Below the pieces are notes generated by a model that did no database searches, was not told the origin of the DNA, and worked only from the letters and a program-made list of their open reading frames with translations. A stretch of 64,000 bases of DNA from the NCBI RefSeq assembly GCF_037042905.1, contig NW_026974141.1, positions 12,958,001 to 13,022,000 of the forward strand. Direction: 5' to 3'. Positions 15,828 through 42,404 of this stretch are shown here, in pieces. Position numbers and translations under genes: made by a program. Origin of the DNA: Lytechinus pictus (Eukaryota). Each line of letters starts with the position of its first letter. Within the stretch, counting starts at the first letter, position 1.

Positions 15828-15829
<2 letters not shown>

Positions 15830-19349: not shown

Positions 19350-22300
19350 CTGAAGGTTATAGAGAATTTCAAAAGAATTATAACTGATAGGCTTACAATT
19401 TAAAGATAAATACCGGTTGTGGTAATGATCTAGAAATGAGTTCAAACAGAATCCAAATAAAAGTACCATCCAAGTGTTAGGATATATGTGCCAAATAGCT
19501 TTGGAAGAAAATGTGTAGCTGATGAGTAAAATAAGCACAGAATTCCAAGCAATATATTAATACACTGTCCCACACATGTTTTCCTGTGTTAGTGATCATC
19601 TGAATTATCGGTTTTGAGCTAAGATTTCATGATTTCACAAAGATATAGATATATGACAATTTGTTGACAATTAACCTTGATTGAAATAATTTTTCCTGCA
19701 ACAACTTTGTTTTATAATCTACCTTTTACAAAACCTTATATATACATATATCTCATTTAATCGGGATAGGATGTGATCGGACCTCTGATAGAATTGAGTT
19801 ATTATATCAATGGCTCTGAATGCAGTGATCCATATTATGAAAATTATTTATATTATGTAATCATTCAAAGTAATTCTTCATTTTTGTGCACTGCACATTG
19901 CTCTAATTTTTATACGGTAAAACAAATCAAACCAATGATACTTGGAAGATATAATTGGTCAAAATATTTTTCAAATTTAAACACTTTCACTTGATAAGCA
20001 GCAAAATGTGGACTTGGTGATTGTTTAAAGGTTAAGCAAAAGTTTGTAATAAAGAATCAAAACATATAATACTACTAATAATATCAATAATAAATCATTT
20101 ATAATGGGCCTAGTTCTTTGTAACTAGACATGGTAAAAATGTCACCACAATCATTCATAACAAATGTGAAATAAAATCTTCAAGGCCTGCAGGACATATA
20201 ATCTAAATCATTTCCTTAATAGTTTAAAGCTATTACGAACTAAACTTGTTATTTAATATTATTTCATTGCACACCATTCAAAATGAAACTTTCAGGTTAT
20301 CATCCCAAATGGATAAAATATAGGTCAGAAAAAAGGACCACAAGCTTCTTAAATCTAGTATTCTAATTATTTGAACCTAGGCCAGGCCGACTCATTTCAC
20401 TGGGATTTTTTAATAGCTAAGATACTAGTTATTAGTTATTTAAGCATCCATTAGAAAAAAAGAAGGTTTAAACTGTATCTAAAATCCTTTTCTGCTCTCA
20501 GCTGAAGAAATTTCAAATGAACGCTTTGAGAACTTCATAATTTTTTCCTTTCTAGAGAAAGTGTACCACCATTGAGATAAAATTGTTAAAATGTTTGAAG
20601 CATTTTGTCCTACCTACTTTTTGTCTAATTCCAGAGGATATTATTGTAAATAAAATTTTATCACAATGGACTTAAATACATTTTATTTCATAGTTAATGT
20701 TAAACTATAGCTCTAGTTAAAATATGCTTTAAAATTCTTACATGGTGGTAGCCTATACTACAAGTAAATTGGCAAAGGGGGGGGGGGGACTCAAACTTTT
20801 TGTGATACTAATATTTCATTAATAACAAACTATACTACCTATTTTGTTAATCATTGCCATATATGTATTACTAAGTATACCATTTGGTTTCATTATTGAA
20901 ATTTTATTTCGGAAGGGGGGAGGGGTTTACACCATCCATTTTACCACCATTTTACACTATCCTATTTATTTTCTGAATAAAGGTAAGAGTAAAATGCATG
21001 ATATAATCAAGTAAATATTAGAAGTCAGAGTCTCAAAACAACCCTTGGAGACAGACACTTGACAAGGCAATTAAATATAAGAATTTTATTTCAATGTTGT
21101 TTTTTTCAAATCAATATTTTACTTTGGGGGAAATTTGAATAGAATACTTAGCCTATTTAACGTTAAGCACCCAATTCTATCAGTCATGCATCTTATCAAT
21201 GGCAAGTTACAAGTTCCTTCTATTAGCTACTATAATACCTCAGCCCATGAAATCTCTTTGGATGAGAGAAACAAATTGTAATGGTCCATTCAAATGTTTT
21301 TGATAAAAACAAGTTTGATAAAAAAAAACATATGGGACCCAAAGCATGCATGATATGAAGTCTACAGTGTACACTGATGATGTCACACTGAAAAACACAA
21401 TCAAATCAAATTCCATGCATAGATATTCATAATGAATGCGTCACAATAAATATTAACTGAATCATACATATTAAATAAATACACAATGAATTCAAACTTT
21501 TTACCCTTCTTCGTATCTGTTTGAAAGAGGATGAAATTCAATGTAAAATAAAAATGTGATTCATGCAAACACAGCATGCAGGTCTCCACAAAAATAAATA
21601 ATGAATCACAAACCTTCCAAGAACTTTTCTAATATTTTCTATTAAAGTCACAAGAACCAATGTGTTCATATCCCTATGTTTATTAATAAGTAATTTAAGC
21701 AGGTACGATGAAGACTGCAAAACTTGACTTTGCATAAATCAAATAACAACACAAGTGAAAGCATGGTCATATGCAGCGGTGGGGGGGGGGCAGGGCAGTG
21801 GCCCCCCAGAAATTTTGAAAATTTACATTTTTTTACTGAAAATTTTAACAAAAGTCACCAAGAGTACATGTATGCGCCAAATCCTTCAATTTAACTTCAC
21901 AAAATGCCCCAATGACAAGCTTGGTCGCTTCGCTCCCTCAAAATTCTTTCGAAAAAGTTTATGCATGCTGCCCCCCAGTGATTTTTTTTTTGTACAGCCA
22001 TGAGTGGAAGCAAATTTTCTGAACAAATTATACAAAGTAATTTATATCTAAATTTCGCCTAAGCTGGACAAATGTCTGTGGTACCAAGAAAGATTCAACT
22101 GTATGACCTCATTTAGGAAACTTCCACATATCAGGGGGAAGGGACACTTAGTGTTGTCAAAAATGAACCCACACGATGTATTAAGGACTACCTCCAAGTT
22201 AACGCACGTGAACCAACTTTATTTCTTTATTCAAATATTGAGATAAGAAATATAATATTAAATAAATTTAGAAATTCCATTTTGCATCATGCAGTAACCC

Positions 22301-23707
22301 TTATGAAACCTCTAAAAGCATCTAGACATATGCATGCATTATGGATAAACCCAAAACACAGTCCTCGATAAATGGTATAAACTATAATGTTATTTCAGTA
22401 TATTTCAGTATGACAAATTAGGGGAATGATATTAAAATAAGGATATATGATTTTTTTTTAAACATATTTGTGGGATTTCAACTCAATGTGATACGTCAAA
22501 GTGCAGATAAAACTATGGGACAATCTACCAAATATGAGTGTAGGAACATGTATTGAGTCACACCAAAAATGTGAAATGTGATATAATACGCAGTTGTATG
22601 ATATCATATGACATCATAAGTATGGCATGCACTAACAATTCAAAACCACAACATGTACATTCCGAAATCTATTCAAGAATTCTTACATAAACTTCATAGC
22701 CTGCAAGAACGGCAAAGTAGAAAACGTGGAGGAGAAGAAACGCAGATGATTTCAAAGCGAAGATCAAGAAAAGCAACATACATTAAACAGAAATTGCATT
22801 CTAAAAGCACTCTAGGATTCAAAGATTTTAATTCCATCGCCCCCCTAATCTCCGGCTTTGGTCGATCTTTGATTAATTCAGAATGCATTGCTTTTAGAAG
22901 GTCAAAATTGAAAATTCAATCAGTAAGTCTTGTGCATATAGTTGGAAAGCAATTACCTTTGCTCCATTTCATACTAGTTTGAATGAAAAAATATAAACAA
23001 AACAAATCACTATATGTCTTTTTCATAAACAAAGTAGCAAACATTTGTTGCATCATTAAAAAAGAAAAATAACGATGAAATAACATTTCGACTCAGCTAA
23101 GCACATTTCAGTAATGAGAAATATTTATTTTATATTTTTCAAATGGAGGCAAAAACCCATAAAGTCAAAAAGACATTCATTTCTTTGGGGAAAACAGGCA
23201 TGAAATTATTTGTGAAATCATAAAAACAAGATGCATCAATTCAGTGCTCAATAAAAAAAATTCCAATGGAAAAAGTGGAAAAAATTCTGAAATGCATGGT
23301 CATTAATGAATATCAATCACATATTTTGCCATGAATGATTTCTTAAATATGAAAAAATACATTTTTTATAATATCTTTCATTAAATATTATTCATCTATG
23401 CATTACGTAATAACCTGACATCTATATAGTGGAAGCTAACTTGACAAGACTTCACTCTACAGTACATTGCCCAAGATCAGTCGGCCTGGGAGAGTGTGTT
23501 TCATGAAGCAAATAAGGAGTGATTTTTCACCGATTAAGTTGCTCTGAGCCAATCAGATGCCAGGATTTCAGTAGCTTAATAACAATTGTATTTGAATCAT
23601 GAAACACTCCCCAGATGCACATCCTAGGAAGAATGAGAAACAGTATAACTTAAACAATTTCCAGTTGACCAGTTCTACATTTGAAGTTGATAAGAAAATT
23701 CACTCAC

Positions 23708-24304
23708 CATTGGATTGTGGTCTTGAGGAGAGGGGTGAATCCGTGCCCCCCTCGCTACCGGTATTAGGATCCAGATCCATCCCATCATAGGTTAACGTGT
23801 ACCTGTCATCCGCGGAGGTCCGCCCCTTCACGTTACCCTCTTCGTCAAACATATGACTGTTACCCCCACGGAATAAACTCCAAGGTCCGACTAACGGTGG
23901 TGACGTCTTAACGGGCGCCTCAACCTTGTTGTCATGGTTACACGGCATTGATTCAATGGTAGCTGTAGTCCTTATAGCATTTGGTTTCTCTGAGTCGTCC
24001 CCGGAATCTTCGGTATTTTTATTCAAGGTCGATTCGGACTCGTTCGTGACATAGTAGCAGTATCCCTCATCTTTGGTGGTTGGGGACGTCTCGAAGCGGT
24101 TGAGAACGGAAGAGTAGCTGGTGGAGGAGATGGAAGACCTTACGGATTCCGTCTCCGTGTAGGATTCGCTGCTGGCCAGTGGGGCTAGACGCTCGTGCGC
24201 TGCAGCGCCCTCGCTTGAAAAGTTTGAGGCAAGGTTCGTAAGAGTTGTTTTGGGCCATTCGTTTTGGGAATTAGTTCTTAGTTTATCATCAGGAATAGAC
24301 TGTT
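23708..24304 (-). CDS. DAGLA: DAGLA C-tail exon (Ser/acidic-rich)
   Basis: Open frame EQSIPDDKL...RPQSN; strong donor ATG|gtgagt; acceptor aagcag| (NAGNAG, less certain); phase 1-1. Confidence 0.75.
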
Positions 24305-25189
24305 CTGCTTCGTCAATCAGCATCCATTGGTTTCCAGAAACACAAGATCCAGGCAGGGACAATGTTATTACCATGTTCAGAAGAGGATGATCCCATAGAA
24401 AATAACCAGGATAGAATCAATGAAAAAAAAATGATAATAAAGAAACATGAATAAAATATTATTAACATAAAGAAATTACAAGGTTTCGAATGAGCTAGGA
24501 TGACTTTTGCCAACTGCATTATTGTATCACATCATTTGAAAGGAAGGTTAATTTTCATATAGGCTGTATCTCACCAACAAAGATTTCACCGCAACATCTC
24601 CCATTTTTGTTCAAAGTAAGTCTCTGAGATGTCTCTGCGACAAAAATGGTTTGAGCTCTCACAAAGGGTGAACTTGCAGGAGACTAATCAGAGACGTCTA
24701 CAAGCCGAACATCAATCAGCTTTCTTGAAAATCTTGGGGAAGTCACCAGTAGTCTCCTGTAGTTGCAGCGATGTCTCAGAAACAAAATTGGAGATGTGCC
24801 AGACAACAGTCTCAGTTCTTATTAGATCAGTAACAGATCAGTTCTGGTACCTCCATACCCAAGGTTTGAGGCAAGAATGGCACATGCTCTTTCGGCAATG
24901 AGGAGAGACTCAAGGATACTAGAGTGTCACTGGATTTTAAGGTTTCAGGCCCAAAACTATACCTTGTCAGCATTTCAGTATCAGATTGCAAAGAAATCCC
25001 TATCACTTTTTGAATGGAGAATTGTTCCAATACCTATGTACCTTGAGGCTTGCTCTTACGGCACTGAGTTGTCATAAGATTCAACGTTTCAGGTCCAAAT
25101 TCAGGTACCAAATTGCAAAACGGAATCACTATTAACTAAAAAATGGAGATCAGTTATGAAACATATACGTGAGACAAGAACGTCACCTG

Positions 25190-25945
25190 GGGTGGTATTT
25201 TGGAACACTGTCATAACTTTTGTCATAAATTTTGTCATTTCTCTCAAAGATGTGACACCGCTATGATTGTCACAAATCGGTATTCTGAACATTGTCTTTT
25301 CCCTGTCATATCTCTATAAGTTTCCGCCCATCTTTTCGGAAGCAAACCAATAAAAATCATTGTTAGTTCCCAGTGGGAGCCATTCTAGCCAATAGGAAGG
25401 CCCCGTGGCAGGTACGGTGTATCCCCGATACAGTTGCTGGCACCGTGCAACTACGCGAATATCGATGCGCTTAATTACAAAGAGAGACAGGGAGCTGTGA
25501 GGGATTTTAGAGGAGAAGTAGACAAAGAAAGAAAACAGAGAAAAACAGGAGGAATTAATATGTAGGGCCTAACTAATTGTAGCATGAAAATATAATATTG
25601 AAAATGTTCATGGATGATGAGTGAAACTAATACCACAAGCTAATCTAAATAATATCATTATATGCTTGTTATTCAGTCGGCAGGGTATTGAAATATTTGG
25701 TACTAAAAGATATGACAAAATTTATGACTGCTACCCCTGTCATAACTTTTGTCATTTATTTTGCTTGTATAAAAGGATTGCGCGCATTTAAAGCCGTGTA
25801 TTTTTGGAGCGCGCTAAAGTTAGAAGAGACGAAATTTATGACAATTTTTGTGACAAAAGTTATGACATCCACCAGAATACCGATTTTGTCATATCTCTGA
25901 GAAAAGATAAAATATGGAGAAAAGACAATGTTCAGAATACCGCCC
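25190..25945. mobile_element. PIF/Harbinger-like non-autonomous element, CTG TSD
   Basis: TIR gggtggtattttggaacactgtc / gacaatgttcagaataccgccc; CTG flanks; subterminal tgtcataa repeats. Confidence 0.8.
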
Positions 25946-26077
25946 CTGTTCTTCCAGCATTGAAGGGAGACTCAAAGGCACTCAGTCTTCATTTAATTCT
26001 AAGTTTTCTGGCCTAAATTCAGTTGTCAGAATTCCCTATCACCTTTGGAATGGAGATCAGTTTTAAGCTCTACATAC

Positions 26078-26228
26078 CTGAGGATTGCGACAAGAACGGC
26101 ACCTGCTCTTCTGGGGTTGAGGGTAGACCTGAAGGCAATAGGTTGTTGTTGGATTCTGAAGCTTTGTTTCCCCATCCTCTGGTAGGTGAGGATTTGTTGG
26201 AAGACCCTGATGATTTGGAAGGAGAATC
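26078..26228 (-). CDS. DAGLA: DAGLA C-tail exon
   Basis: ctccag|GAT and CAG|gtatgt; DSPSKSSG...VPFLSQSS; phase 0-1. Confidence 0.8.
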
Positions 26229-26969
26229 CTGGAGATTTGTGGAAAGAGGAAAAAAAGAGAAAATGGAAATAATCAAGGATTTCAGACAAGAAAAGTGATC
26301 TTTGTATATATGTTTACGGGAACCAGTTAGTTCTCGGCACTCCTCAGTTTGTTCATCAATGTGAAGAGGATCATTTAATCTTCTTGGGGTTTGGAGAAGT
26401 TAGGCTGGGTGGGTCAGCAGATGGCCTGTCAGGCCAATCTATGCCCTAAATAGTCTCTGGCAGCGTGGTCAGGGAATACTGGCAGCTGATACAAGGTTGG
26501 TAGTCCTTGCCTTCCTAGCCTGTCTGTGTTCTACAGACACTGCAGTCCTGTTGGCCTCGCATATTTTGGCACCGTCATGAATAGCTGTTCACAAGACCCA
26601 ATACCACTATGCCACTATGACAGAGATATATTATTTAAAAAAAGGTCCCATATATAAGGTATAAGACCTGCCCAGGAGTATACGTAGGTAAACTCTAACC
26701 ATAAACCATATTTAGAGGAAGCAAAATGATCTTCAAAACTAGGTGTTTCGAAAAGAGGCTGAGTTAAACTGACCAGTCCATCGGGGACCAACAGATGGAC
26801 TACGAGTCGCAAACGGACAAAACAAAACGGCCATGTCCACACAACAATACATAAATCTAGATGAGGAAATATATGTCTTAAAGTGGTCTTTAGTAACACT
26901 GAATTTCTTATGTACTTTTTAGGTTCAGCGGTTCCCGGCCTCCACAGAAAAATCATTGACTTTCCCCGG

Positions 26970-27135
26970 TAAAAAATAATATATATTGACTCGGCACTAA
27001 AACCACAGAGAAAACTTCACACCTAGTTACCAAGAATGCGTTCAGCATTTTCATTTATTTGAATGCAGGATAAAAGAGCATTGCTGATTAAATGCCCTGC
27101 TCACGGGCATAGGTGCCTCAGCCGGGGATCGAACC
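26970..27135 (-). mobile_element. 5'-truncated tRNA-derived SINE starting at the intron donor
   Basis: ggttcgatccc B box followed by cccgtgagcagggcattt, ending in an AT-rich tail. Confidence 0.5.
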
Positions 27136-27138
27136 TAC

Positions 27139-27327
27139 CTGGAAATGTACAGTGTGAGCGCCCTCTCTTGTTGATCTCGCTGGTTTCATCTGCAGGTATG
27201 ATGAATGAGATGACGATGAAGAAGGTGGTTGGTTGAACTCTTGACTTGGGGATGGGGGACTCATGGGGGCCCTCCCGACCTGCGACCAGCGCTTTGGTAG
27301 ACCGTGTCTCTTCCCGTACTCCATGCA
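27139..27327 (-). CDS. DAGLA: DAGLA exon (start of C-tail)
   Basis: tctttag|TGC and CAG|gtaggt; CMEYGKRHG...TVHFQ; 189 nt, phase 0-0. Confidence 0.85.
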
Positions 27328-27459
27328 CTAAAGAGAGATATAAATACATTAATGACATAACAGAATACTAGACAGTAATCTGGACGCAGACCGGTGATTA
27401 ATTTCCACACAAATACATCACAGGCCTTTTCTGCCGTCATAGTCAAAACTATACACTGA

Positions 27460-28050
27460 CAGCAAGATCTAGACTAGTTACTACACCGTGTTTAGAGCTC
27501 TCATTACACTTTGGGACAGATGATCCTTGGTTAAATGATGACACCACAGATTAGTCAAACAATAAACACTTTTATACTCTAAGTTGGTGTTTTCTGCCTT
27601 ACCAGTCCAAAGAAGTAATTGAGACTAAGATCTAGGTCTTGGACCATGTACAGGCCTTGTCTAGAGCTCTCATGACACCCTCCCAGTAGGTAACCCTTGA
27701 ATTATCTCTTCATGACTTCTTACATCAATCAAATAATACACTTTTTAATATCATTTTCTTCCTTACTACTCTTGACTAGTAACTGAGACCAAGACATAGA
27801 TCTTGGACCAGATACGGACCTTGTCTAGAGCTCTCATGACACCACCTGGTAGATAATCCTTGGTGAATTATCTCTTGATTACCTCATACATCAATAAAAT
27901 CATACAAGTTTTACACCATTACATGACCTTTTCTACCTTACTAAACATCTAAACTAATAATTTAGAACAAAACTTGGTCTGGACCATATACAGACCTTGT
28001 CCAAGGCTGTCATGACACCTCCTGGGAGATGATCCTTGATGATTACCGGT
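27460..28050 (-). repeat. Degenerate tandem repeat of about 170 bp made of the 3' end of the catalytic-His exon plus its donor (4 copies including the exon)
   Basis: Exon-end equivalents at 27996, 27820, 27656 and 27487. Confidence 0.8.
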
Positions 28051-28122
28051 GAAATCAGAACCTCACTGAAATCCTCGAGGTCTCTCCAGATACCATAGTA
28101 AGCACAATCTTTCTTACTGATA
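27996..28122 (-). CDS. DAGLA: DAGLA exon with catalytic His (KDHLP)
   Basis: cccacccag|T and AAG|gtctgt; ISKKDCAYYGIWRDLEDFSEVLISPVIIKDHLPGGVMTALDK; phase 2-0. Confidence 0.92.
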
Positions 28123-28813
28123 CTGGGTGGGAAGAGAGATACATGGAAATATTACTAGAGGGTAATAACTTAAAATTCTTTTGAGCGCCTCGTGAGCGAC
28201 GTTACGATGGTATGATATTGATGTGACAGAAAATGTGCAGAACGGTGAAAATCTATGGTGTATTGCACTTTAAGACAATTTCCATTGTTGAATTGGCTGG
28301 CTACCCAAGATTACAAGCAGAGTCAACATCAAGCATCTGGTTTGCACAATATAGTGTCAGATTTTCAGTCACTTCCTCATTGTTTTTCTCAGTGTATCAA
28401 TCAGGCCTTTCTAAAAATAGATATTCAAATTTAGGATTAGATTTATATTTTTCAACGAGATGGGGATATTTGCTTTGCAATGATGGAATGTATAATCATA
28501 TATATGTAAAATCATCAATCAATTCTACACTGTGAACTAAAAAAAATGTATCCTCTTTTTAGACTTAATGGTGGCAGCGGTGGGATCGACCTTATATTTT
28601 CACTGACAAATTTGCTCTGAGCCAATCAGATGCAAGGATTTCAGTAGCTTTTAACAGTTTTCAGAGAAAATCGCTGACTAGTTGTTTCATGAAATGCTCC
28701 TCAGATGTTCACGTGGATGACCTAACATTTGCTCCTGCCATAAATGCTGGTGTCATAATCATTTCTTTTTAGAGGTAGAAATTGTGATGCAAGTACTTTT
28801 ATCAGCTACTTAC

Positions 28814-29028
28814 CCCTCTCTCTTGTGGTTATTCCTGACGATCTGCAGCACCCTCCCTGGTAGGTAGAGGGGGCTGTGCGTCGACAGCACCAGGGCGTGG
28901 TTTGTGGGATGGAAGGCTTTGTCGAGTCGACACGGAAACGGAGACGGCGTGTCCACATCTTCGACGGGGGCCAGGTTTTTGGAGTGAACGGTGCAGCAGC
29001 ATAGGAGCTCACCCATTATAACCCTCCA
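28814..29028 (-). CDS. DAGLA: DAGLA exon (regulatory loop, PLYLPGR)
   Basis: accag|TGG and GG|gtaagt; WRVIMG...SPLYLPGRVLQIVRNNHKRE; phase 0-2. Confidence 0.93.
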
Positions 29029-29311
29029 CTGGTTCGAAGGAAAAATATATGTACAGTAGATGAGTGATAAGCAAGCTAACATAAATGAAATATAAATACC
29101 TTTTAACTTCATATACCACTCTTCAATTCTGAAATTGAATAATGATTAAAGATTCCTTCTTACCTAGTCTCCCTTTCCTATGACTTTGTTCAATGTTATT
29201 GGAGCTGTCAAGCCAAATCCTCAAGGATATTATGCAACAGCAGTTTCCATTTTTACTCATGTCATGTTTTTCATCTATATCATTTTAATAAACTTGTATT
29301 TCCATCAATGT

Positions 29312-29611
29312 GGAGCGTTGTGGCCCAGTGGATTAGTCTTCTGACTTTGAAACAGAGGGTCGTGGGTTCGAATCCCAGCCATGGCGTAATTTCCTTGAGC
29401 AAGGAATTCATCCACGTTGTGCTGCTCTCAACCCAGTTGAGATGAATGGGTACCTGGCAGGAATTTGTTCCTTGAAATGCCACCGCGCTGTATAAGGCTG
29501 TGGGGCTAAAGCCAGGGTAATAATATCCAAGTGCTTTGGAAGCGCATAGGGACGTTATGACATAATGCGATATGCGCTATACAAGAACTGCGTTATTATT
29601 TTTATTATTAT
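29312..29611 (+). mobile_element. tRNA-derived SINE
   Basis: Same family as 3959-4250; perfect B box ggttcgaatcc. Confidence 0.9.
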
Positions 29612-29704
29612 TTTGATTGTTATGATTGTACATACTGATTTTTCTATTTCTGTATGGAATCTAATTGAACTGAATTGATATCTAAAAATGGTTGAGGAAT
29701 TTAC

Positions 29705-29846: not shown

Positions 29847-29935
29847 CTGAAAGAATAAAATCAAAATGAAAAATAAATCATCATCAGCAGCATCATCAGG
29901 GTCAACATCACCATCACCACTATTAATATCGTAAT

Positions 29936-30547: not shown

Positions 30548-30555
30548 CTACTCAC

Positions 30556-31699: not shown

Positions 31700-32163
31700 G
31701 GGCCTTTTCACACATGAATCTTGAATCATTGTAATAATGATTGCAATTCATCTTTAGAATCATCGGACCTTTCACTCACTCGCAAATTGTGATTTGAAAT
31801 CAAATTCCCGAGCGAAGGCGGTATGTGTCCTTGGTGACCTGTCAATCAAAGCACTGCATCGCAAATGCAAGCTACGATGAGTGCATGACAATTGTATTAT
31901 CTACGGAATTGCTTGAAAGGTCACGTAAGCTCCTCCCCCCAAAAGATGTTTTGGAGGTCAAGCCTTTCACACGGAAAATTCGTACAGTAATTTGAGTGAA
32001 ACTTAACTTGAATTCACCTCCGGAGTAGAAATTGAATTTCGTGATTGTGATTAGCATTCATGATTCCAGTTTGGTTTCACACGTGCTAAAAATTTGTCAT
32101 TAGCCTTATTTTTCACTGGAATCATCATTCAAATTACGATTTTTTTTACTGTGTGAAAGGGCG
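31700..32163. mobile_element. Harbinger-like MITE
   Basis: ggccttttcacaca ... tgtgtgaaagggc termini. Confidence 0.55.
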
Positions 32164-32253
32164 GTAAGGCAGATTATTCTGCACAATGTGTCTTTTGTAA
32201 ATTTGAACGGTGCACATTCACATCTCAACCCACACTACCACTCCCAAGCTTAC

Positions 32254-32415
32254 CTTATGGCCTTGGTATGGTGATGATTCATCTTGACTGGAGATAGGGC
32301 TTGTGTCTGCACTCAAGTCTGTCACTATGTCAGCAACAGACAGCGTACCCCTGATAGAAACGACCACTCGACTTCTTTCGTGATCAAGAGCAACGAAGAA
32401 CGGCGTCTCCCACAC
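32254..32415 (-). CDS. DAGLA: DAGLA exon (start of lipase class 3 core)
   Basis: cttcag|GTG and AAG|gtaagc; VWETPFFVALDHERSRVVVSIRGTLS...QGHK; phase 0-0. Confidence 0.96.
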
Positions 32416-32908
32416 CTGAAGATCAAATAGACAAAAAAATGCCAAAATTGATCCTATTGCCTCCTCAAATTTACAATTGATCTGATCAACCTCAACTGTA
32501 TGGAAATCCATCAATGTCATCATTTTCTTTTCAGGAAATTTCCCAAACGTCCTTTGTATACCAAGGGAAGCACACTCAATTTTCAAGAAAACAATGTATG
32601 CATTAATATACAGCATATCTAAAAGAAAAATTGAACAAAGACGCATTTTAGATGTTGATGTTGTGGGCTTTCCATAGTTGTGGTTGATCAGATCAATCAC
32701 AACTCTTTGTAAGACGGGGCCCTTTTGTTGGAAGACTGAAATTCTCATTTTAACAAGCGTCTAAAAGGAAAATTCAATATGTTACAAAGTTTGATAGGGA
32801 TTATAGGGAAATGCACTCCCATTTTTCTAAAAGATGGAATGTTCAGGGTATCTATTTTAGCACCTAAGAAATGGTCACCAGTCATGTGTAAAGCCATGTA
32901 TAACTTAA

Positions 32909-33505
32909 AGGGATACTCCAGGCTGAAAATATTTATATCTAAATAAATAGGGTAAAATTCACAGAGCAAAATGCTGAAAATTTCATCAGAATCTGATAAC
33001 AAATAATGAAGATATTGAAATTCAAAGTTTAGCAATATTTTGTGAAAACAGTTATATGCATGTCATCATTAATATTCATTAGGTGGGCTGATGTCACATC
33101 CCCACTTTCCTTTTTCTTATGTTATTTCATGAAATCATAATTATTTCATTTTTTCACACACGTGTAAATGATGTGTCTCCATTATAATGAAACAAGTTGC
33201 AGCAATAAATAAATAATGCACTTAATCAGTTTTCAATCCAATTGTTTTAGTTCTTGGTAATTTTTTTTTTAATAAACCTTATTTCATATAATATAAAATA
33301 CAAAAGAACAAGTGGGGATATGACATCATCAGCCCACCTAATGAATATTCATGAAGACATGCCTAGAACTGTTTGACTGGAATAATGCAAATATTTAGAT
33401 AACTTTCTTATTTTTTATCCGATCTTGATCAAATTTTCAGCATTTTGCTTTGTGAATTTTACTCTATTTATTGAGATATGAATATCTTCAGCCCGGAGTA
33501 TCTCT
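32909..33505. mobile_element. Kolobok-like non-autonomous element, TTAA TSD
   Basis: ttaa|agggatactccaggctgaa ... ttcagcccggagtatctct|ttaa; long inverted arms. Confidence 0.85.
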
Positions 33506-34089
33506 TTAAAAGCAGCTTCATGAAATGGCCCCTTGGATATATAACAACTAAAGCTGAAAAGCTGAATGCGAGGTGATGCATAAATGGATTATTGGCACTG
33601 TGTGAATCAACCAATCACGATGAAGCATGTGAATGGCTAACCAATCATCTGCAGGAACCAATTTATTCATTGAGGCATCAAAAATTAGGAGTGAATATTC
33701 AAAACAAAGTAAAATTTATGCTACACAAAGTAAAAGTAAAACAAGATGCAAAATATCATTTTTAACTTGATGCTAATAATGGTTAATCAAGGTGCTCTTT
33801 TGTATAAAAAACAAGATTTATAAGGACAATTTGATATCCTTTGGCAAGGATATTATATAAATTGTTAAACTTTTATTTCATTCATCCTTTGATTTTGCTT
33901 AAAATGTGAACAAAAGAAAATGAAAAATAAATCCAAACAATAACTCCTTTCTGCACTGTAAGGCAATGAATCTAAGTACTGTAGAGATTTGAAACTTTCA
34001 CTATCTCTTTAAGAAACCTCAGGGGGCTACATAAGTATGAACGGCATAAAAAAATTCCACTATTCTTCATAATCTTTCCTTATGAATCC

Positions 34090-34265
34090 GGGTGGGTGTT
34101 TCATAAAGCTGTTCGTAAGATAAGAGCAACATTAAGAACGACTGGTGATCCTTTCTTTTGGTAAATGGGATACACCATTGGAGATGGTTTAGCGCGTAAG
34201 AAAGGTTCACCAGTCGTTCTTAAAGTCGCTCTTAACTTACGAACAGCTTTATGAAATGGCCCCCC
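34090..34265. mobile_element. Short MITE
   Basis: tttcataaagctgttcgtaag / cttacgaacagctttatgaaa inverted termini. Confidence 0.8.
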
Positions 34266-34398
34266 GCATATGTTCAAGACTCTATTTCAATTTTCATTTT
34301 AAAACAGAAATGGAATGGTTGCTTAGAGAACAATAATGCACAAATGATATTATGCTCATGAAAGGATGTGCCAAAAACGATATTCAGCAAAAAATATT

Positions 34399-34825
34399 AG
34401 CCCGAATTCACGAAGGTGGTTTTGAAAACCCACGGTTGAGTCCATGGTTTATGCAGATTTACTGGATAAATTACGCTTATTTTACCGCGTATATTAAAAA
34501 ATGTCCAATGCTGATGCACGCTTTTGTCACAGTACGCCAAATTGAAGCCTGTTGCCGTGGTTATCCATGTTATTTTATTCATGAGTCCACTATTTGAATT
34601 AATAAGTCCACTCTCTAAACAGAGGACTCATGAATAGAATAGCGTATCTAACCATGGTAACAGGCGTCCATTTGGCGCACTGTGACAAAAGCGGGCATCA
34701 CAATTGGACATTTTATATACACACCCACCCGATACGCGCCAAATTAAGCGTAATTTATACAGGAAATCTGCATAAACCATGGATTCAACCATGGGTTTTC
34801 AAAACTACCTTTGTGAATTCGGGCC
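34399..34825. mobile_element. Palindromic MITE
   Basis: gcccgaattcacgaaggtggttttgaaaaccc / gggttttcaaaactacctttgtgaattcgggc. Confidence 0.85.
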
Positions 34826-37800
34826 ATTGTGTCTCAACATTTTACAAAGACTTGGTAAAATTTGTTAATCCTTTCTTAATTCAAATTGCACCCCACCCCA
34901 AAAAAAATAATAACATTAGAATATTTTACTAAATTTTCATGATCACATCATAGAAAAAATGTGGACCATATAAGGGGTAACCAAAACTTTTGTAATATGG
35001 GTCAGAACAATCATCTTTGTTACTGTTTCTGTTATCATTGCTACCATCATTCATCCTAACTCATGCATAAAATAACATTATATATATCAGCAAAATAATT
35101 GTGTGAGTTAGTAGCCTTGGTTATGGTTGTAAAAAGGCATTGTGAAAACTTCTAAGTCAAAGCCATTCAAATCTGTGCAATAATGAACTCAAGATCTCAT
35201 ATTAATTAATGATAACTTGTTAAAATAACATAAAAGATTACTCTTTCATTGTATGAAATGTCCATGAAATTAACTAGAACATCTACTCTCTTCATTAAAA
35301 CTTGATGATGAAAAAATTATTTCAGTGTTACCACCTCATTACTATATGTAAATACATGGTGAAAGGTCCCTTACAGATCAAAAGCAATTTTCGTACAGAT
35401 TTGTCTTTTTCTTGGTGTAAACCTCTGAGTATTCCCAGATATCCAGATAATTATTACGCTTCATAACTACCAATTCGGGACTACATATTAACCCTTAACT
35501 TGACCTTGGAAAAAACACTTCAAGATCACCATGCATTATAATTTCAACCATTGCACCTCAAAGCAGTCAATATCAATGCATATCCCATGATATGTAGATG
35601 ATAGCACATATTACCCCATAGGCCTTGTGGTGCACCAGCTCATGCCGATGTACATTGAAGCAGTCATCATTGCAGCAGTCGTAACTGTTAAAAACCGTGC
35701 CGTCTAAGCGTTAGAATGCAGTTGTTACTGCACGAGTTAGTGTCGTGGCGTGCGGCAAACCGTGCATTGATATATAACACAGATCATTTTACCTTTGAAG
35801 TAGACGTTCGTTTCGCAATCTTTGTCGTCATGCGAGGTTGTCTAACTACCTTACGTGCATGCTACATGACAAATCACAACACAGATAACTGGTCATACGA
35901 TTATGATAGGTTATAAATATTGAATATCATATCATTTGTATAGAAATCAGAAGGGCATTAATCTCGCGCTTTTTGCAAAAACTTACCATAGAACTGCAAT
36001 ATATGTGACTACTTGTTAGATAAAAAGATGGCAATTTTTCTATTTCTTTAAAGACTCTGAAACTACAGAGGCAATGTATCAGATAACTGTTGAAAGATTT
36101 TATATGTACATGATAAATCATTTTTTCTGGGGTCGCGGGCAAGTGGGTTTATAAAATGATAAAATCCCTTGTCTTTTAGAAACACATGGAGAAATTTTGT
36201 GCTATGTATCAAAGAAACGCTTGTTAGCTGATGCCAATTTTTTTTTCTCCCATCAAAGTTTTAAAAGTAAAATTTCGATGAAAAAGTCATAACCCAGATA
36301 ATAAATTTCAACAGAAATCAATGCCCTTCTTTTTTCAAACAGACTTTCTGTTTAGTGATGAATTACTGAAATACACAAAAATGTATGCTAGTAAACACTT
36401 AAAAAACATCAAGCTATAAAACAAATATATATGGGATATTCTATTATAAAACATGTATCCATTAACTAAGATCCTCTGTGATATGAAATTGCATAATTTG
36501 ATTTTTAAAAATCATTATTTCAAAAATTTTGATGAATTCTTCACTTTAATTTTGAGTCATTTTGGAATGATTTTAGTGCAAAATTATGTCCCTTGTAATT
36601 GCAATAGTTTAACACCATCTTGTGTTTTACTCTCACTCATTGTGTGGCTATGTGTGGTTCAATTCTTGACTCATCTACTTGTCTAACATTCAAAATTTAC
36701 AGATTGACATCTATCTTCCCAGACCCCCTTTCACTTAATACAGAACCACCCGAATCCTAACGCCAATTGCTAAACTTCAGATTGATATTTGGTTCCAATT
36801 CGATCCTATTTCGTAAAACTTGTCATCAAGTTAATATGTGACATATTTGCTATTAACTACTCAAATTACATGGCTTCAGTATTACATAACAAGATATTGT
36901 GCCTTGATGATGATAAGACAAATGTAAGTTTTATGGTAAGATCATAGATTAATGAGGATTATTAATCATAAGAACTGCTAGAAATCTCTGACAAATGGGT
37001 TTTGGGCCAATCATAATGCTTCCTACTTCATAACAGTAGCTTGTAACATGCCATTGATAACAAGCTTATGATGAAAAGGGGACCTTTACATCTTCTTGCA
37101 TGTATCCCAACACTGCCACCATTGCTTATGGACTTTATTATCAATAACTGTTGGAAATATATGACAATGGTGCTGTTGTCCAATCAAATTGCAGGATTTC
37201 ATTAGCTTATGACAGTTGTTTGTAACTTGCAATTGATAACAAGCTTTATGAAACAGGGCCCTTTATATCTTCTTGCACATATCCCACCGCTGCCACCATT
37301 ACTGACACCAGAGCGGTGTTTCACTTATGAGTGATTTTCTCTGACAAATTTGTGCTCAGCCAATCAGATGCAAGGATTTCAGTAGCTTATAACAACTATA
37401 TATGACAAATATGTGAATGAAACACTCACAGGATGTCCATTTGAGAATAAACTGAACTCTTTTAACATGGCAAAAACCAAAGTCATAGCCACACAATGAA
37501 GTAGAGATTACATGATAATGTGAAACACCCTAAAATTAAAGTAATATGAATTGCAAAATAATGTTTCCGTTATGGATGAAATTACACCAAATTAAAAGTG
37601 AAAGAAAATTTATTGACCCTTGAGTGCTCACTAGTTACCTTATAAATTGTCCCACTTGTTTAAAATGTGCAACATTGTGAGTGTTTATCTGTGTTTAATG
37701 TTTATTTTCAATACAGTATGCTGTGTGTACATGATCTTTTGTAATAAGTAATACATGTATATATGTGGTATATAGTGGTGGTATATTGTGGAGGAAAAAA

Positions 37801-40620
37801 ATATCAATTTTAGGGATATATATGAAAATATTGAATATTAGACCTATATGTGTGATATAGGCCTACATTTAAATCACAGTGACACAATGTCAACGTAACA
37901 TGCAATATCAGATTTTGTGTACTAAAAAAATATATCAATTACAAAAAACATTACCTCAAACACTTGACTCAGTAAATGTCTAAATACATGTATGCATTAT
38001 TATTTCATATCATATTTTTCTCTTTGAAACTGAATATAAGTAATATGTGTAGGGATAATAATGCAAGGCATTGAGCATACACATTAACCACACATTGTAT
38101 CCGTACTGATGGTTCGATCAGAAACCGAACCTGCTTTCAAAACAAAATTTTCAACTGATTGTATAAATAATCAAACAATAAAATATTTAGGAGATTTCAA
38201 AACTAGGAGAAAGGGTGGAAGGATCTTAACTGCCATCCAGTTCTCCTGTGTAATTTTGTTTATTTATTTGTAATCAAAATAATAACTTTTGTTTCAGGTT
38301 TTAAAACCAATGTTGGTTTTCAACACTAAAGTTTTAATTACCCTCTTCAAGAGTGGATTGGTTTTGCTTGTAAGTTACTCAGAGAACATACTCTGACAAA
38401 CATTTATTATATAAAAGTTAGTTTTACCTTAGTTACAAGCAAACACAAAATACTCATTCTGAAAAAAAAGAAAACCATATAGTGCATCAATACCATCATT
38501 CAAGTTATGAAAATATTTTAGCTTGCAAACCACTCTTTCAATCATAACATATTTACCTGTCACCAGAGTGGAATATCCCCAGAACACAAAAGCACAAACC
38601 CACACTGAGGTTACCGCTGGACTATTCTACTCCACTCACAGGGGGAAAAACACTCTAACAAACACAGGGAGGGAAAAGCAAGAAAATATTAAAGAGCACT
38701 GCAGAAGCAAATCCAACCGTACAACGTCAAAAGGGGGCAAGTGACAAATGGTGATGTTTTCTGTAAATGAACAAATTGTACCTATTATCAATACTGATGT
38801 CAATGCAATATCATATTGGTTTGCCTGACATATCTCTGAGCAGAATGAGTATTCATGAAAAGAAAATTGTCAAGAAAAAGAATACAAAATGACAAATATG
38901 AAAATATCAACTCAAATATTCTAATTTGTCACTTGCTCCATTTGGCATTGTATTGCAGAAAGGTATAGAATAGACTAGTTCGCAAGCTCGTTGCCATCGA
39001 GGATTCAACTGATGAAAATAGAAAAGCAGTACAGAAATTCTACAAGGCAGGCAGAGTTCAGGGAGATATTTGTGTGTAAAACACCACACAATATCAAGCA
39101 AGTTAATAAAGAAGCAAAAGGGAAATAGATGCCCTAAAAGAATTGCACAATGTTTTGGATGGGTGCATAGGCTGTCCACATACGCGTATTACATCATGCC
39201 TCCGAAATATGATGAGCATAACATGTCGATCAATGTTAATGTCATGTAATGTTAACTTCAAACGTCATTCAGGCAAAATATCAAGCGCTGTCACATATTT
39301 TTGGGGTTGAGATAAAAGTTCTAAAATGAAGCGGAATGATAAGCATGCAAAAGTAAAGGGCAAAGCGAAGCAACAATGCAGAGCAATCTTCAACTACGAT
39401 AGATTCTGCTATGATGGGCATAGCTCATGCAAAGACTATCCAAGCAAAGCTGTAAAGTGATATCAGATTAAAGGGAAGTCCAATCAACTTAAATAAATTT
39501 ACATAAACCAGAAAAAAATGTCTGAAACCAATCAACCAAATAAAAAAAAAAAGCAATTTAATCTGTTTAAAACTTACAGTGGCAACTCTATTATCTCATT
39601 TCATATCAGTTTGATTTCAATGATTGAACATTTAATATTCTATGATTTTCTTACATCTTTTTCATGACAAAATATTAATTCAAACTCATTTCACACTGGA
39701 GGATATGTAAAAAGAGGCTATTTGTGGAATAAGTTGTTGTTGTTTTTTTAATTATAGAAATAGTATTCTATTATTCATGATCTATTTAACTTAATGAATC
39801 GCAGTAAAATTTTTCAATAATTCTTCTCATATTAACTACATTATTTCAATTTTACCTTTGAACACAAGTCTACAAAAACCTAATAAATATGTAGCCAGAA
39901 AATTTTGATTCCTCACTTCCTTTAAAAAGGTCATATCAGGGGTGCCACTAAAAATTGAATTTAAGAAAGATGAAAAACCATCTAAAATGAGCCATTTTTG
40001 CTCAAAATAAGTTCAAAATGAATTTTGACTCAAGTTTGCAGAGTTGAGTCTCTTTTGCTTGTTAATCAAATTGGACTTTCTCTTTAAACCTTGAAATCGA
40101 AAGCTTCAAATCACGCAACACTCCAACACTCGGAAACTAGATACTGGTAGTAATACGAGAGTGAAGAAAAAAGCCAGGCAGCTGGAGAATATGGCATAGA
40201 AATGTCCACTTCAAATTGGCATATTAAACATAACCAAAACAACCAACAAGTTACAGAAATAGCAAAGCTTATGCTATAGTGAAAAGTAGATGGGGAGGGC
40301 CGGAGGGGACGGCAGTCGAGAGAGGGGGATGGGGGCGGTAGTAGAGAGAGGGAGGGGGGCATTAAACTGTTATGTATGACTTCATTGTTGACTGTAATAT
40401 GAAACGTAGGTTGTTTTCCTGGCATTTTACTGACATTATAGCAAAGATACTTTTCCCCCATATATATATATGTATGCAGTGACTGTGAGAATTTTAATAA
40501 TTTACATATTACAACTAAAGCTTATGTCATTAAAAGTGATTGAAAAAAAGAACTTCTTCTTTGATGTACTCCAGTTCTTGAAGTCATGCATAACATGAAA
40601 CAGATTGATACAGGGGGAGA

Positions 40621-40844
40621 NNNNNNNNNNNNNNNNNNNNNNNNNNNNNNNNNNNNNNNNNNNNNNNNNNNNNNNNNNNNNNNNNNNNNNNNNNNNNNNN
40701 NNNNNNNNNNNNNNNNNNNNNNNNNNNNNNNNNNNNNNNNNNNNNNNNNNNNNNNNNNNNNNNNNNNNNNNNNNNNNNNNNNNNNNNNNNNNNNNNNNNN
40801 NNNNNNNNNNNNNNNNNNNNNNNNNNNNNNNNNNNNNNNNNNNN
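40621..40844. other. Assembly gap
   Basis: Run of N. Confidence 1.
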
Positions 40845-41703
40845 AGAATGAGAGGGGGGGGGAGAGGGGTCCTCAAACACACTGACCAACCCAATTTAAT
40901 ATCGTGTGTACAATGTTCTTCCTAAACTAGATTCAACTGTTATAGGAATAGGAAAGATAACTCTCCATATTTTTGCAACCAAAAAAAACAATATTTTTCA
41001 TACTAATCTATCAATTTTTTAAAACTAAAATGAATAAATTTATGAACACCTAAAATGCATTATTGCTCAGAAAAAATGTTTTTTTGCAATAAGCATATTT
41101 TCTATAAATTATAATCTAAGAAGTCCAATAAGATATACATATATATCTTTTTATTACTTTTTATTAAACTGATCTTGAAATCATGCAAGAACATCAAATT
41201 CTTCTTCATGAAAATGAATATATTCCTATGTCTAGGAGACATTATGATCTGTCATGCGACAAATTACAACCCATAAAGAATGTCTAAAGATACTTGTATC
41301 AACAACAGATGATGAAAGTGCTTCTAATCTGATGTGTTGATTGACTCAATATTAATTAAAAAACTATTATTGTTATTATTATTTACTAATAGACAAGAAC
41401 TCTAACATGTAAATGATGATGTACATGTATTTATGGACAACAGTTACATGTCCATCACTGACATAAATACTAGTGATTTGCTTTTGTTCTACTGGATTTC
41501 AAAACTAAACTGAAAACTAATGGACAAATTATTAAGTTCTAATTAATTCTATATTTTGTTCTAAAGACATAGATTTTTCTTTTTAACAAAAGAATGGGGA
41601 TATATAATGTAAGTGTTATGTATTCAACAGAGATGACTCTCTATGTTGTAGGTGGACACAAGTGGGTTTAATAGTTTCCATACAAAAAATGAGGGGTTGC
41701 GTT

Positions 41704-41860
41704 AGGGGAGGGGAGGGGGAAGGCAAGGAGAGGGGAGGGGATGGCAAGAGGAGGGGGAGGCAAGGGGAGGGGAGGGGAAGGGGAGGGGAAGGGGAGGAGA
41801 GGGCAAGGAGACACAGGGCTTGAAGTGGGCAGGGAGAAGGGGGAAGGGGGGAGAGAAGGG
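41704..41860. repeat. G/A-rich (GGGGA)n tract; polypyrimidine on the DAGLA pre-mRNA
   Basis: Seen directly. Confidence 0.85.
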
Positions 41861-42404
41861 GATTTCTAAGAAACATTTGTGACAGAAGGACAACAAGAAT
41901 CAAAACTTGCAAGCATGCCATGCAACAAAACTGAAAGGCAAAAAATGAGACTACAAAATGAAAATAAAGATTGGAGGAAGAGAGAAAAAAAATAATAAAA
42001 TAGCATACCAGGTTTTCTGACTGTGACAGGCTTGATACACTCCCAGCTGATAAAACATCAGAATCACAACAAGCTTGGCTGCAAGGGGAAAGAGAGGGAG
42101 GCAAGCAAGAACAAAAACGACCACCACAAGACAATAAACCATCATCAAAGACATCGGAAGACCCCAACGACCCCGCGTCAAAGGTCATCATGCGGTCATC
42201 CATCTCCTCTTGGAACGAGAGGCTCGTCGTGAGGCAGATGCCTGATTCCGGGGTCTCGGCATCAAGCAGGGTTTTATCACCCCTGGAATTTGGAACGTCC
42301 CTCTTCAAGCCCCCCTTTTCGTTGGTCCGCCCAACCAGGACCAAGCCCTCGGTATCTAACCCATAGCTTTCGGTGACAGAGGAGTCCTCTTTATTGCTAC
42401 TGAC

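What the first reader, a model, noticed from the sequence alone, without database searches (positions are those of the whole stretch)
19350..42404. Candidate microexon/cassette splicing programme concentrated in two DAGLA introns
Seen: the strongest unexplained splice-site pairs fall in two introns. One is the 10-kb intron just before the lipase core (alternative donor 42009, 15-nt exon 38640, pair at 35615-35861). The other is the last intron (14-nt exon 22687, 12-nt exon 21505). Most match the phase of their intron. Known: neural microexons in bilaterians depend on SRRM3/4-type eMIC proteins (UGC in the pyrimidine tract) and Rbfox (UGCAUG), and DAGLA makes the endocannabinoid 2-AG at synapses. 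Inference: this invertebrate DAGLA may be diversified combinatorially at the membrane-to-catalytic hinge and at the C-tail. I know of no description of this.
Basis: partly seen in the sequence, partly recalled or inferred. Interest (0 to 1): 0.75.

Follow-up and report, generated by a model that had tools for sequence, protein, structure and literature searches.

The report
Sea-urchin DAGLA alternative-splicing hotspots

Summary
The window is Lytechinus pictus; the minus-strand gene matches RefSeq DAGLA-like XP_063970812.1 at about 100%. All five named splice-site pairs exist, but such pairs are no commoner on the sense strand than on the antisense strand (8 each), so sequence alone proves nothing.

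Supported:
- The 396-nt extension (42404-42009) is open and under purifying selection (dN/dS 0.16). It is exactly the X1/X2 isoform difference in two sea stars and a sea cucumber.
- The 35861 acceptor belongs to a real 69-nt cassette (35861-35793), annotated in three urchin species.
- The 14-nt exon (22700-22687) gives the alternative tail of L. variegatus XP_041453260.1. Its splice sites are kept in Strongylocentrotus and Diadema.

New: a 17-nt exon (22973-22957) carrying a stop codon, spliced between the last two exons in one RNA contig.

Rejected:
- The 15-nt exon: no acceptor in S. purpuratus, no donor in the second L. pictus copy.
- The 89-nt second cassette.

Unresolved: the 12-nt exon.

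UGCAUG is enriched in the last intron (8 against 1.9 expected). Neural, eMIC or Rbfox control is untested.

Earlier scan notes cover this window only, not other DNA.

The parts
42405..42555 (-). Constitutive part of the exon before the hinge intron; it ends ...ATFHVS at the proximal donor (GT at 42404-42403)
   Evidence: Sequence. 100% match to XP_063970812.1 residues 156-207. dN/dS 0.03 against S. purpuratus.
42009..42404 (-). Optional 396-nt (132-codon) exon extension ending at the distal donor CTG|GTATGC, phase 0 like the proximal donor
   Evidence: Open frame. dN/dS 0.16 with dS 0.48 against S. purpuratus. Present in L. pictus XP_063971191.1 and in long isoforms of all five echinoderm classes; it is the exact X1/X2 difference in Patiria and Acanthaster and the X2/X3 difference in Apostichopus. 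Conserved motifs across classes.
40621..40844 (.). Assembly gap inside the hinge intron
   Evidence: Run of N. No annotated coding residue is missing. Not filled or looked up.
38640..38654 (-). 15-nt candidate exon (SVFPP): rejected
   Evidence: The acceptor AG is absent in S. purpuratus. The donor GT is lost, and 4 nt are inserted, in the second L. pictus copy. No annotated protein carries SVFPP.
38530..38710 (.). Conserved non-coding island of about 180 nt that holds the 15-nt candidate at its upstream edge; function unknown
   Evidence: 86% identity over 186 nt to S. purpuratus, against a 62-70% background. Single-copy apart from the second gene copy. No Rfam match. No unusual folding (z 0.05 and -1.04).
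35793..35861 (-). 69-nt in-frame cassette exon (23 aa, HARKVV...STSK): acceptor tag|CATGCA, donor AAG|GTAAAA
   Evidence: Its translation is in S. purpuratus XP_030849967.1 and L. variegatus XP_041453260.1, and is identical in the older L. pictus model XP_054774730.1. Both splice sites are conserved in S. purpuratus, in a conservation peak at 35897-35803.
35850..35861 (-). Possible 12-nt form of the cassette (HARK) using an internal donor AAG|GTAGTT
   Evidence: Diadema setosum XP_072164751.1 has HARK only, from a 12-nt exon in L006. The internal GT is conserved in L. pictus and S. purpuratus. Its use in Lytechinus was not shown.
35615..35703 (-). 89-nt second cassette candidate: not supported
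   Evidence: Neither the acceptor AG nor the donor GT is conserved in S. purpuratus. It is in no annotated protein, and 89 nt is not a multiple of three.
32152..32415 (-). Lipase-core exon after the hinge intron (starts VWETPFF; the low-coordinate end is approximate)
   Evidence: Acceptor ttcag|GTGTGG. Protein mapping.
23708..24323 (-). Penultimate coding exon, ending ...SRPQSN plus one base (phase 1)
   Evidence: RNA-contig joints start at 23708.
22957..22973 (-). 17-nt microexon (ctag|TATGAAATGGAGCAAAG|GTAATT). Read in phase it gives V then TGA, so the protein ends ...QSNV and lacks the last 122 residues
   Evidence: In run X1, a 496-nt contig joins 23708 to the last exon through 15 extra letters plus the two letters AG (tables 5c and 8). 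The letters match this site with one mismatch and match the second L. pictus copy exactly. The AG, the GT, the 17-nt length and the stop are conserved in S. purpuratus.
22687..22700 (-). 14-nt frame-shifting microexon. It replaces the last 122 residues by GYEVYWEPLLPSHTSLRPS
   Evidence: L. variegatus XP_041453260.1 ends ...QSNGYEVYWEPLLTSDTSLRPS. The 23-mer from CAG to GTAAGA has 1 change in S. purpuratus and 2 in Diadema setosum. It sits in one of only two conservation peaks of the intron, 22740-22648. UGC lies directly before the AG.
22626..22631 (-). UGCAUG 56 nt downstream of the 14-nt exon
   Evidence: The motif also lies roughly 65-70 nt downstream in S. purpuratus and about 105 nt downstream in Diadema.
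21505..21516 (-). 12-nt candidate exon (in frame, DTKK): unresolved
   Evidence: The AG and GT are kept in S. purpuratus, but the exon there reads D I stop, and identity is at background level. It is in no annotated protein and no joint was listed. Its start matches the annotated 22-nt tail-switching microexon of Antedon with a single 1-nt deletion; 1 of 300 shuffles gave such a match.
21385..21436 (-). Conserved intronic element that contains UGCAUG
   Evidence: 37 of 39 nt are identical to S. purpuratus. It is the second conservation peak of the last intron.
18985..19349 (-). Last coding exon (122 aa tail with the conserved PEAKLGHGYTEY motif, plus the stop codon)
   Evidence: The canonical joint 23708|19349 is seen in contigs of runs X2 and X7.

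Best explanation
The hinge intron and the last intron of this sea-urchin DAGLA gene are genuine, evolutionarily old hotspots of alternative splicing.

At the hinge, the transcript can take one of several paths.
- It can splice from the proximal donor (42404). This gives the short form, FHVS|VWETPFF.
- It can run on to the distal donor (42009). This adds a conserved 132-residue acidic and cysteine-rich segment.
- It can include a cassette at 35861. This adds 23 residues, and possibly only 4 through an internal donor.

In the last intron, a 14-nt or a 17-nt microexon can be included.
- The 14-nt exon shifts the frame and gives a 19-residue substitute tail.
- The 17-nt exon brings a stop codon at once.
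- Both remove the conserved 122-residue tail coded by the final exon.
- Both stops lie in or within 12 nt of the last exon, so nonsense-mediated decay is not expected (general rule, inferred).

Shown here: the sites, their conservation, their presence in annotated proteins, and one spliced RNA contig. Inferred: that the variants change the anchoring or regulation of the enzyme, and that an Rbfox-like factor binding UGCAUG (and perhaps an eMIC-type factor for the 14-nt exon) controls the choice.

The 15-nt and 89-nt candidates are not exons. The 12-nt candidate is undecided.
For: Identity of the gene:
- The window's exons match L. pictus XP_063970812.1 at about 100%. That protein carries Pfam Lipase_3.

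Hinge intron:
- Three junction forms occur in annotated echinoderm proteins.
- The Patiria, Acanthaster and Apostichopus isoform pairs differ exactly by the extension. Apostichopus X1/X2 differ by a 15-aa cassette in the same intron.
- The extension has dN/dS 0.16, like the neighbouring tail exon at 0.15.
- Motifs in the extension are shared by all five echinoderm classes.
- The cassette is annotated in three urchin species, and its splice sites are conserved.

Last intron:
- The L. variegatus protein tail equals the predicted 14-nt frame-shift product.
- The 14-nt exon and its splice sites are kept in Strongylocentrotus and Diadema.
- The 17-nt exon is spliced in a contig of run X1. Canonical joints are seen in X2 and X7.
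- No retrocopy in the genome could mimic this contig.
- Antedon isoform X2 gets its short tail from a 22-nt microexon in the same intron.

Conservation and motifs:
- Peaks at 85% or more between L. pictus and S. purpuratus in 14 kb of intron fall only on or beside these elements.
- UGCAUG occurs 8 times in the last intron, against 1.9 expected (0 of 200 simulations reached 8). S. purpuratus also has 8 in its 3-kb intron. The nine short constitutive introns between the two have none.
Against: - Direct RNA evidence is thin. It is one contig in one run for the 17-nt exon, and that contig fits the second gene copy or haplotype better than the window (15 of 19 variant positions).
- No joint was listed for the 14-nt or 12-nt exon in the four runs laid. 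Contigs drop rare forms, and 11 joints were not shown.
- Support for the 14-nt exon, the cassette and the extension comes from automatic RefSeq models, whose read support I could not see.
- The hinge intron was not tested with reads, because only one call was allowed.
- The window's own annotated protein uses neither alternative.
- The cassette shows weak protein-level constraint (dN/dS 0.61 on 23 codons).
- Tissue specificity and the trans-acting factors are untested. Genome searches for the SRRM_C and Fox-1_C domains were blank but uninformative.
Confidence: 0.72

Rival explanations
1. The events are real but are not a protein-diversifying programme. The frame-shifting and stop-carrying microexons, and perhaps the cassette, would be low-level or regulatory unproductive splicing. 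They would lower the amount of full-length enzyme rather than make variants with their own function.
For: Both well-supported last-intron microexons destroy the reading frame. The 12-nt candidate reads as a stop in S. purpuratus. The cassette has dN/dS 0.61. The substitute tail after the 14-nt exon is simply the +1 frame of the last exon.
Against: The stops lie in or 12 nt before the last exon, where decay is not expected (general rule, inferred). The peptide coded by the 14-nt exon is kept as G-Y/F-E-V/F-Y in three urchin lineages. In run X1 the 17-nt form was the assembled path. A crinoid makes an equivalent short tail with a different microexon, which points to selection for the tail-less protein.
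Confidence: 0.18
2. The named sites are chance AG..GT pairs, and the conserved islands around them are transcriptional enhancers or other non-splicing elements. On this reading the annotated variants are prediction artefacts.
For: Short pairs are as common on the antisense strand, 8 against 8. The island around the 15-nt candidate is conserved although the candidate's own splice sites are not. No joint for the 14-nt exon was listed.
Against: For the 14-nt exon the conservation peak is centred on the exon, and the AG, the GT and the 14-nt length are kept over three lineages. Its predicted product is an annotated protein end. The extension shows codon-level selection. A spliced contig proves microexon use in this intron.
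Confidence: 0.06
3. The window's gene is a silent or redundant duplicate. On this reading the splicing variants belong only to the second copy on the same chromosome, at 2.57 Mb.
For: The RNA contigs of runs X1 and X2 agree with the second copy at 15 of 19 variant positions. The long-form L. pictus protein XP_063971191.1 fits the second copy better.
Against: In the window all splice sites and open frames are intact. The extension differs from the long-form protein at one residue. The two loci are 91-93% alike in introns and may be haplotypes of one gene in a very polymorphic species. Some contigs carry no differences from the window (contig 5).
Confidence: 0.1

Closest known systems
RefSeq isoforms of echinoderm DAGLA-like genes (Patiria miniata X1/X2, Acanthaster planci X1/X2, Apostichopus japonicus X1-X3, Antedon mediterranea X1/X2, L. 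variegatus XP_041453260.1, S. purpuratus XP_030849967.1)
   Same: They use the same two introns. They show the same 117-134-residue hinge extension, a cassette in the hinge intron, and a short alternative tail made by a frame-shifting microexon in the last intron.
   Different: These are automatic annotations and are not described in any paper I could find. The window's own gene is annotated with a single product. No protein retrieved here ends as the 17-nt exon would predict. The cassettes and microexons differ in sequence between classes.
Bilaterian neural microexon programme (SRRM3/SRRM4 eMIC domain; Irimia 2014 and Torres-Mendez 2019, as cited in PMC12992808)
   Same: The exons are 12-17 nt long with strongly conserved flanks. 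UGC lies directly before the 3' splice site of the 14-nt exon. The host gene acts at synapses in vertebrates.
   Different: The well-supported microexons here shift the frame or carry a stop, whereas that programme is mostly frame-preserving (my knowledge). The 17-nt exon has no UGC nearby. Neural inclusion and eMIC dependence are untested.
Rbfox-regulated alternative exons (UGCAUG downstream enhances inclusion; my knowledge)
   Same: UGCAUG is enriched about fourfold in the last intron of two species. It lies within about 55-105 nt downstream of the 14-nt exon in three urchin lineages.
   Different: This is motif evidence only. No binding, expression or perturbation data exist.
Mammalian DAGL-alpha C-terminal tail as a scaffold-binding and regulatory region (Homer PPXXF motif, ankyrin-G binding; PMC9356056)
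   Same: The long C-terminal tail follows the catalytic domain, and it is the part that the urchin microexons remove or replace.
   Different: No PPXXF motif is present in the echinoderm proteins checked. The echinoderm tail has its own conserved motif (PEAKLG.GYT.Y). Splicing-based removal of the tail is not something I know to be described for mammals.
Insect inaE / DAGL isoforms
   Same: RefSeq lists short (about 700-785 aa) and long (about 1000-1330 aa) isoforms of the insect orthologue. I recall that two inaE products with different C-termini were reported by Leung et al. 2008 (from memory, not checked here).
   Different: Whether the insect length differences lie in the tail was not checked here. 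Whether the insect variants arise from microexons, or at a homologous intron, was not examined either.

Membership tests
sn-1 diacylglycerol lipase alpha (DAGLA) gene | Lipase_3 catalytic domain and orthology to annotated DAGLA | tested here: met
   The window's exons are about 100% identical to L. pictus XP_063970812.1 'diacylglycerol lipase-alpha-like'. That protein carries PF01764, and its best hits are DAGLA of many animals. Single exons alone gave no Pfam hit.
Alternative 5' splice site (exon extension) | Two donors in the same phase, with the stretch between them behaving as coding sequence and present or absent in isoforms | tested here: met
   Both donors are phase 0, with 132 open codons between them. 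dN/dS is 0.16. Isoform pairs in three other species differ by exactly this segment. Use of the distal donor by the window's own copy was not shown with reads.
Microexon (30 nt or less) alternative splicing | A short exon flanked by AG and GT and joined to both neighbouring exons in RNA | tested here: met
   The 17-nt exon sits in a spliced contig of run X1. The 14-nt exon is supported only through an annotated protein end and conservation. The 15-nt candidate fails. The 12-nt candidate is undecided.
eMIC (SRRM3/4)-dependent neural microexon | UGC motif close upstream of the 3' splice site | tested here: inconclusive
   Present and conserved for the 14-nt exon: cttgcag in L. pictus and S. purpuratus, and ctgcgacccacag in Diadema. 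Absent for the 17-nt exon and the cassette.
eMIC (SRRM3/4)-dependent neural microexon | Neural-specific inclusion that depends on an eMIC-domain protein | not testable with these tools
   The runs are coded with no tissue given. The genome search for SRRM_C found nothing, in a tool built for exon-free genomes, so this is uninformative.
eMIC (SRRM3/4)-dependent neural microexon | Frame-preserving insertion into a protein surface (typical, not absolute; my knowledge) | tested here: not met
   The 14-nt exon shifts the frame and the 17-nt exon carries a stop. Only the unproven 12-nt candidate and the 12/69-nt cassette keep the frame.
Rbfox-regulated exon | Conserved UGCAUG in the flanking intron, enriched over background | tested here: met
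   There are 8 sense copies against 1.9 expected (0 of 200 simulations reached 8), and 8 in the S. purpuratus intron. The motif lies within about 55-105 nt downstream of the 14-nt exon in three lineages. Dependence on Rbfox itself is not testable here (one search is uninformative).
Recursive splice site / RS-exon (considered for the 15-nt candidate) | A conserved 3' splice site directly followed by a 5' splice site | tested here: not met
   The AG is missing in S. purpuratus, and the GT is missing in the second L. pictus copy.

The most novel reading that the evidence does not exclude
Echinoderm DAGLA may carry a two-switch splicing programme that is more than 450 million years old. One switch adds a conserved acidic and cysteine-rich hinge module. 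The other uses different frame-shifting microexons in different classes (14 and 17 nt in urchins, 22 nt in a crinoid, with the urchin 12-nt site as a possible relic of the latter) to delete the conserved C-tail. On this reading the choice is made in neurons by Rbfox-type and eMIC-type factors, and it sets where and how 2-AG is made.
Probability: 0.2. Interest if true: 0.65.

Novelty: new member of a known kind. Interest (0 to 1): 0.42.

Why it matters
DAGL-alpha makes the main endocannabinoid, 2-AG. In mammals it is positioned through its C-terminal tail (PMC9356056).

The evidence here suggests that echinoderms can switch that tail off, and can add a conserved hinge module, by splicing. The exons involved are kept across deep echinoid splits, and an equivalent switch exists in a crinoid. 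That gives a concrete and testable handle on how an invertebrate deuterostome tunes this enzyme. L. pictus is a tractable genetic model (my knowledge).

It also provides a small test set for whether Rbfox-type and eMIC-type control of microexons operates in echinoderms.

In practical terms, the current L. pictus annotation of this gene lists one product. It misses at least the 17-nt exon, and probably the 14-nt exon, the cassette and the long form.

The result also shows how unreliable splice-site pairs are on their own. Two of the five sites picked were false, and one real exon was missed.

Tried and rejected
- 15-nt exon (38654-38640): rejected. The acceptor is absent in S. purpuratus. The donor is destroyed, and the length changed, in the second L. 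pictus copy.
- Reading the surrounding conserved island as a longer exon: the substitutions are mostly non-synonymous in the open frame (my reading), so this was rejected.
- Reading the same island as a structured RNA: no Rfam hit, and folding z-scores of 0.05 and -1.04.
- 89-nt second cassette (35703-35615): rejected, because neither splice site is conserved.
- Search for short database proteins that carry the tail junction: blank. Fragments are filed under full-length cluster representatives, so this is uninformative.
- Fetching the chromosome copy of S. purpuratus and the L. variegatus locus: the gene ranges exceed 100 kb, so no DNA was returned.
- SRRM_C and Fox-1_C searches of the genome: blank, and the controls were blank too, so no conclusion follows.
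- 14-nt and 17-nt exons in sea stars and the crinoid: not found. The 17-nt exon was not found in Diadema either.
- PPXXF Homer motif: absent from the echinoderm proteins checked.

Full report
**What the window is.**
- The gene lies on the minus strand. Stop-free stretches and mapping of database proteins place 16 coding exons between 63097 and 18985.
- The exons are about 100% identical to Lytechinus pictus XP_063970812.1 (929 aa, 'diacylglycerol lipase-alpha-like', Pfam Lipase_3). So the window is L. pictus.
- It sits at about 12.96 Mb of a 17.2-Mb contig. A second copy or haplotype lies at 2.57 Mb on the same contig, 91-93% identical in introns.
- The exon before the hinge intron runs 42555-42405. 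The lipase-core exon starts at 32415.
- The last intron is 23707-19350, phase 1.

**The observation.**
- Each of the five named splice-site pairs is present as described.
- A rough weight-matrix scan of my own shows that they are the best short pairs in their introns.
- Over the whole window the gene strand has no more such pairs than the opposite strand: 8 outside known exon ends against 8. The pairs alone are therefore not evidence.
- Both assembly gaps are intronic. No annotated residue is missing.

**The distal donor at 42009.**
- A search of 1.8 billion representative proteins with the 182 residues from 42554 to 42009 found proteins that run through the proximal donor.
- In annotated proteins the junction FHVS|VWETPFF occurs in three forms.
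  - Short form: the window's own product, and Patiria X2.
  - Long form, with an extra 115-140 residues: L. pictus XP_063971191.1, a metaclust entry matching the S. purpuratus sequence, Diadema antillarum, Amphiura, Patiria X1, Antedon.
  - Cassette form, with a 23-residue insert.
- The X1/X2 pairs of Patiria and Acanthaster, and X2/X3 of Apostichopus, differ by exactly this extension.
- Against S. purpuratus (locus L001) the extension has dN/dS 0.16 at dS 0.48. The next large exon has 0.15.
- Two motifs and a cysteine cluster in the extension are shared by all five echinoderm classes.
- This is a real, old, optional coding segment. It is not a microexon.

**The cassette at 35861.**
- The 23-residue insert of S. 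purpuratus XP_030849967.1 and L. variegatus XP_041453260.1 is the translation of 35861-35793.
- The older L. pictus model XP_054774730.1 carries it letter for letter.
- The acceptor and the donor AAG|GTAAAA are conserved in S. purpuratus.
- Diadema setosum uses only the first 12 nt (HARK), from a 12-nt exon. The matching internal GT is present in Lytechinus.

**The 15-nt candidate.**
- It lies at the edge of a 180-nt island that is 86% identical to S. purpuratus.
- S. purpuratus has no AG at the candidate's acceptor.
- The second L. pictus copy has CT instead of the donor GT, plus a 4-nt insertion.
- No protein contains SVFPP.
- The island itself is single-copy. It is not a known or obviously structured RNA. 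It remains unexplained.

**The last intron: RNA evidence.** I used the single read-laying run here.
- Contigs of runs X2 and X7 show the canonical joint.
- A contig of X1 carries 15 extra letters between the exons, and its match runs two letters (AG) past the last exon's start. Together these make a 17-nt insert.
- The insert corresponds to ctag|TATGAAATGGAGCAAAG|GTAATT at 22973-22957, with one mismatch. It matches the second copy exactly.
- Read in phase, the insert gives V and then TGA.
- The AG, the GT, the length and the stop are conserved in S. purpuratus.
- The genome holds no intron-less copy that could mimic this contig.

**The 14-nt exon.**
- L. variegatus XP_041453260.1 ends ...QSNGYEVYWEPLLTSDTSLRPS. 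That is what inclusion of 22700-22687 predicts.
- The exon with its splice sites has 1 change in 23 nt in S. purpuratus and 2 in Diadema setosum. The rest of the intron aligns at 62-65% or not at all.
- It is one of only two conservation peaks in the intron.
- No joint for it was listed in the four runs. Contigs show presence only, and some joints were not displayed.

**The 12-nt candidate.**
- S. purpuratus keeps the splice sites, but the exon there reads D, I, stop.
- No protein carries the insert.
- Its first letters match the annotated 22-nt microexon that gives Antedon isoform X2 its short tail, with a single 1-nt deletion. One of 300 shuffles gave such a match. This was a post hoc test.
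- I leave it open.

**Regulation.**
- UGCAUG occurs 8 times in the last intron, against 1.9 expected, and 8 times in the shorter S. purpuratus intron.
- It is absent from the nine short introns between the two hotspots.
- One copy follows the 14-nt exon in all three urchin lineages. Another sits in the second conservation peak.
- UGC directly precedes the 14-nt exon.
- This fits Rbfox-type, and possibly eMIC-type, control (PMC12992808 for the latter), but it is motif evidence only.

**Comparison and novelty.**
- I found no paper on DAGLA microexons or on sea-urchin DAGL splicing.
- Most of the events already stand in RefSeq models of sister species.
- The kind of mechanism is well known. This is a new, partly unannotated member of it.
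- Earlier notes of this scan concern only this window.

Noticed in passing
window 38530-38710: A single-copy intronic island about 180 nt long, 86% identical to S. purpuratus. That is better conserved than the coding exons at the nucleotide level. It has no conserved splice-site pair, no coding signature, no Rfam match and no unusual folding. Its function is unknown.
   Followed up: partly
G000 C21:2554824-2575914 (loci L003, L004, L010): A second copy of the DAGLA gene lies 10 Mb away on the same contig, 91-93% identical in introns. RNA contigs agree with it at 15 of 19 variant positions. It may be a retained haplotype rather than a paralogue. An older RefSeq model (XP_054774730.1, 'low quality') looks like a chimaera with duplicated lipase exons.
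   Followed up: partly
window 12638-17618, minus strand: A LINE-type retrotransposon lies just downstream of the gene. It has a 1033-aa ORF with PHD finger, endonuclease and reverse transcriptase domains, preceded by a 259-aa ORF with a baculovirus-FP-like domain.
   Followed up: partly
window 23539-23578 and 19499-19681: Two short intronic stretches have very high summed contig depth in all four runs (up to about 19,000 and 4,600), with many loose ends. The second lies inside a repeat found on many contigs of the genome. The first looks like a short, abundantly transcribed repeat.
   Followed up: no
window 41700-41880, minus strand: A long C/T-rich tract lies just downstream of the distal donor. 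The same kind of tract follows the donor in S. purpuratus, and a conservation peak (41939-41884) adjoins it. It could be a binding platform for a pyrimidine-tract protein that influences donor choice.
   Followed up: no
window 3930-4205, 4830-5291, 29283-29576 (minus); 43427-43681, 55766-56026, 58270-58491 (plus): Six or more copies of a short interspersed repeat, recognisable by a shared pseudo-translation (...VPIHL.WVECSTMW.NFL.KE.TPWLGFEP...HWATTL).
   Followed up: no
L009 about 36769-36790 (Antedon mediterranea): The short tail of crinoid isoform X2 (DNEEACRI) comes from a 22-nt microexon in the last intron. The exon itself contains GCAUGC.
   Followed up: partly
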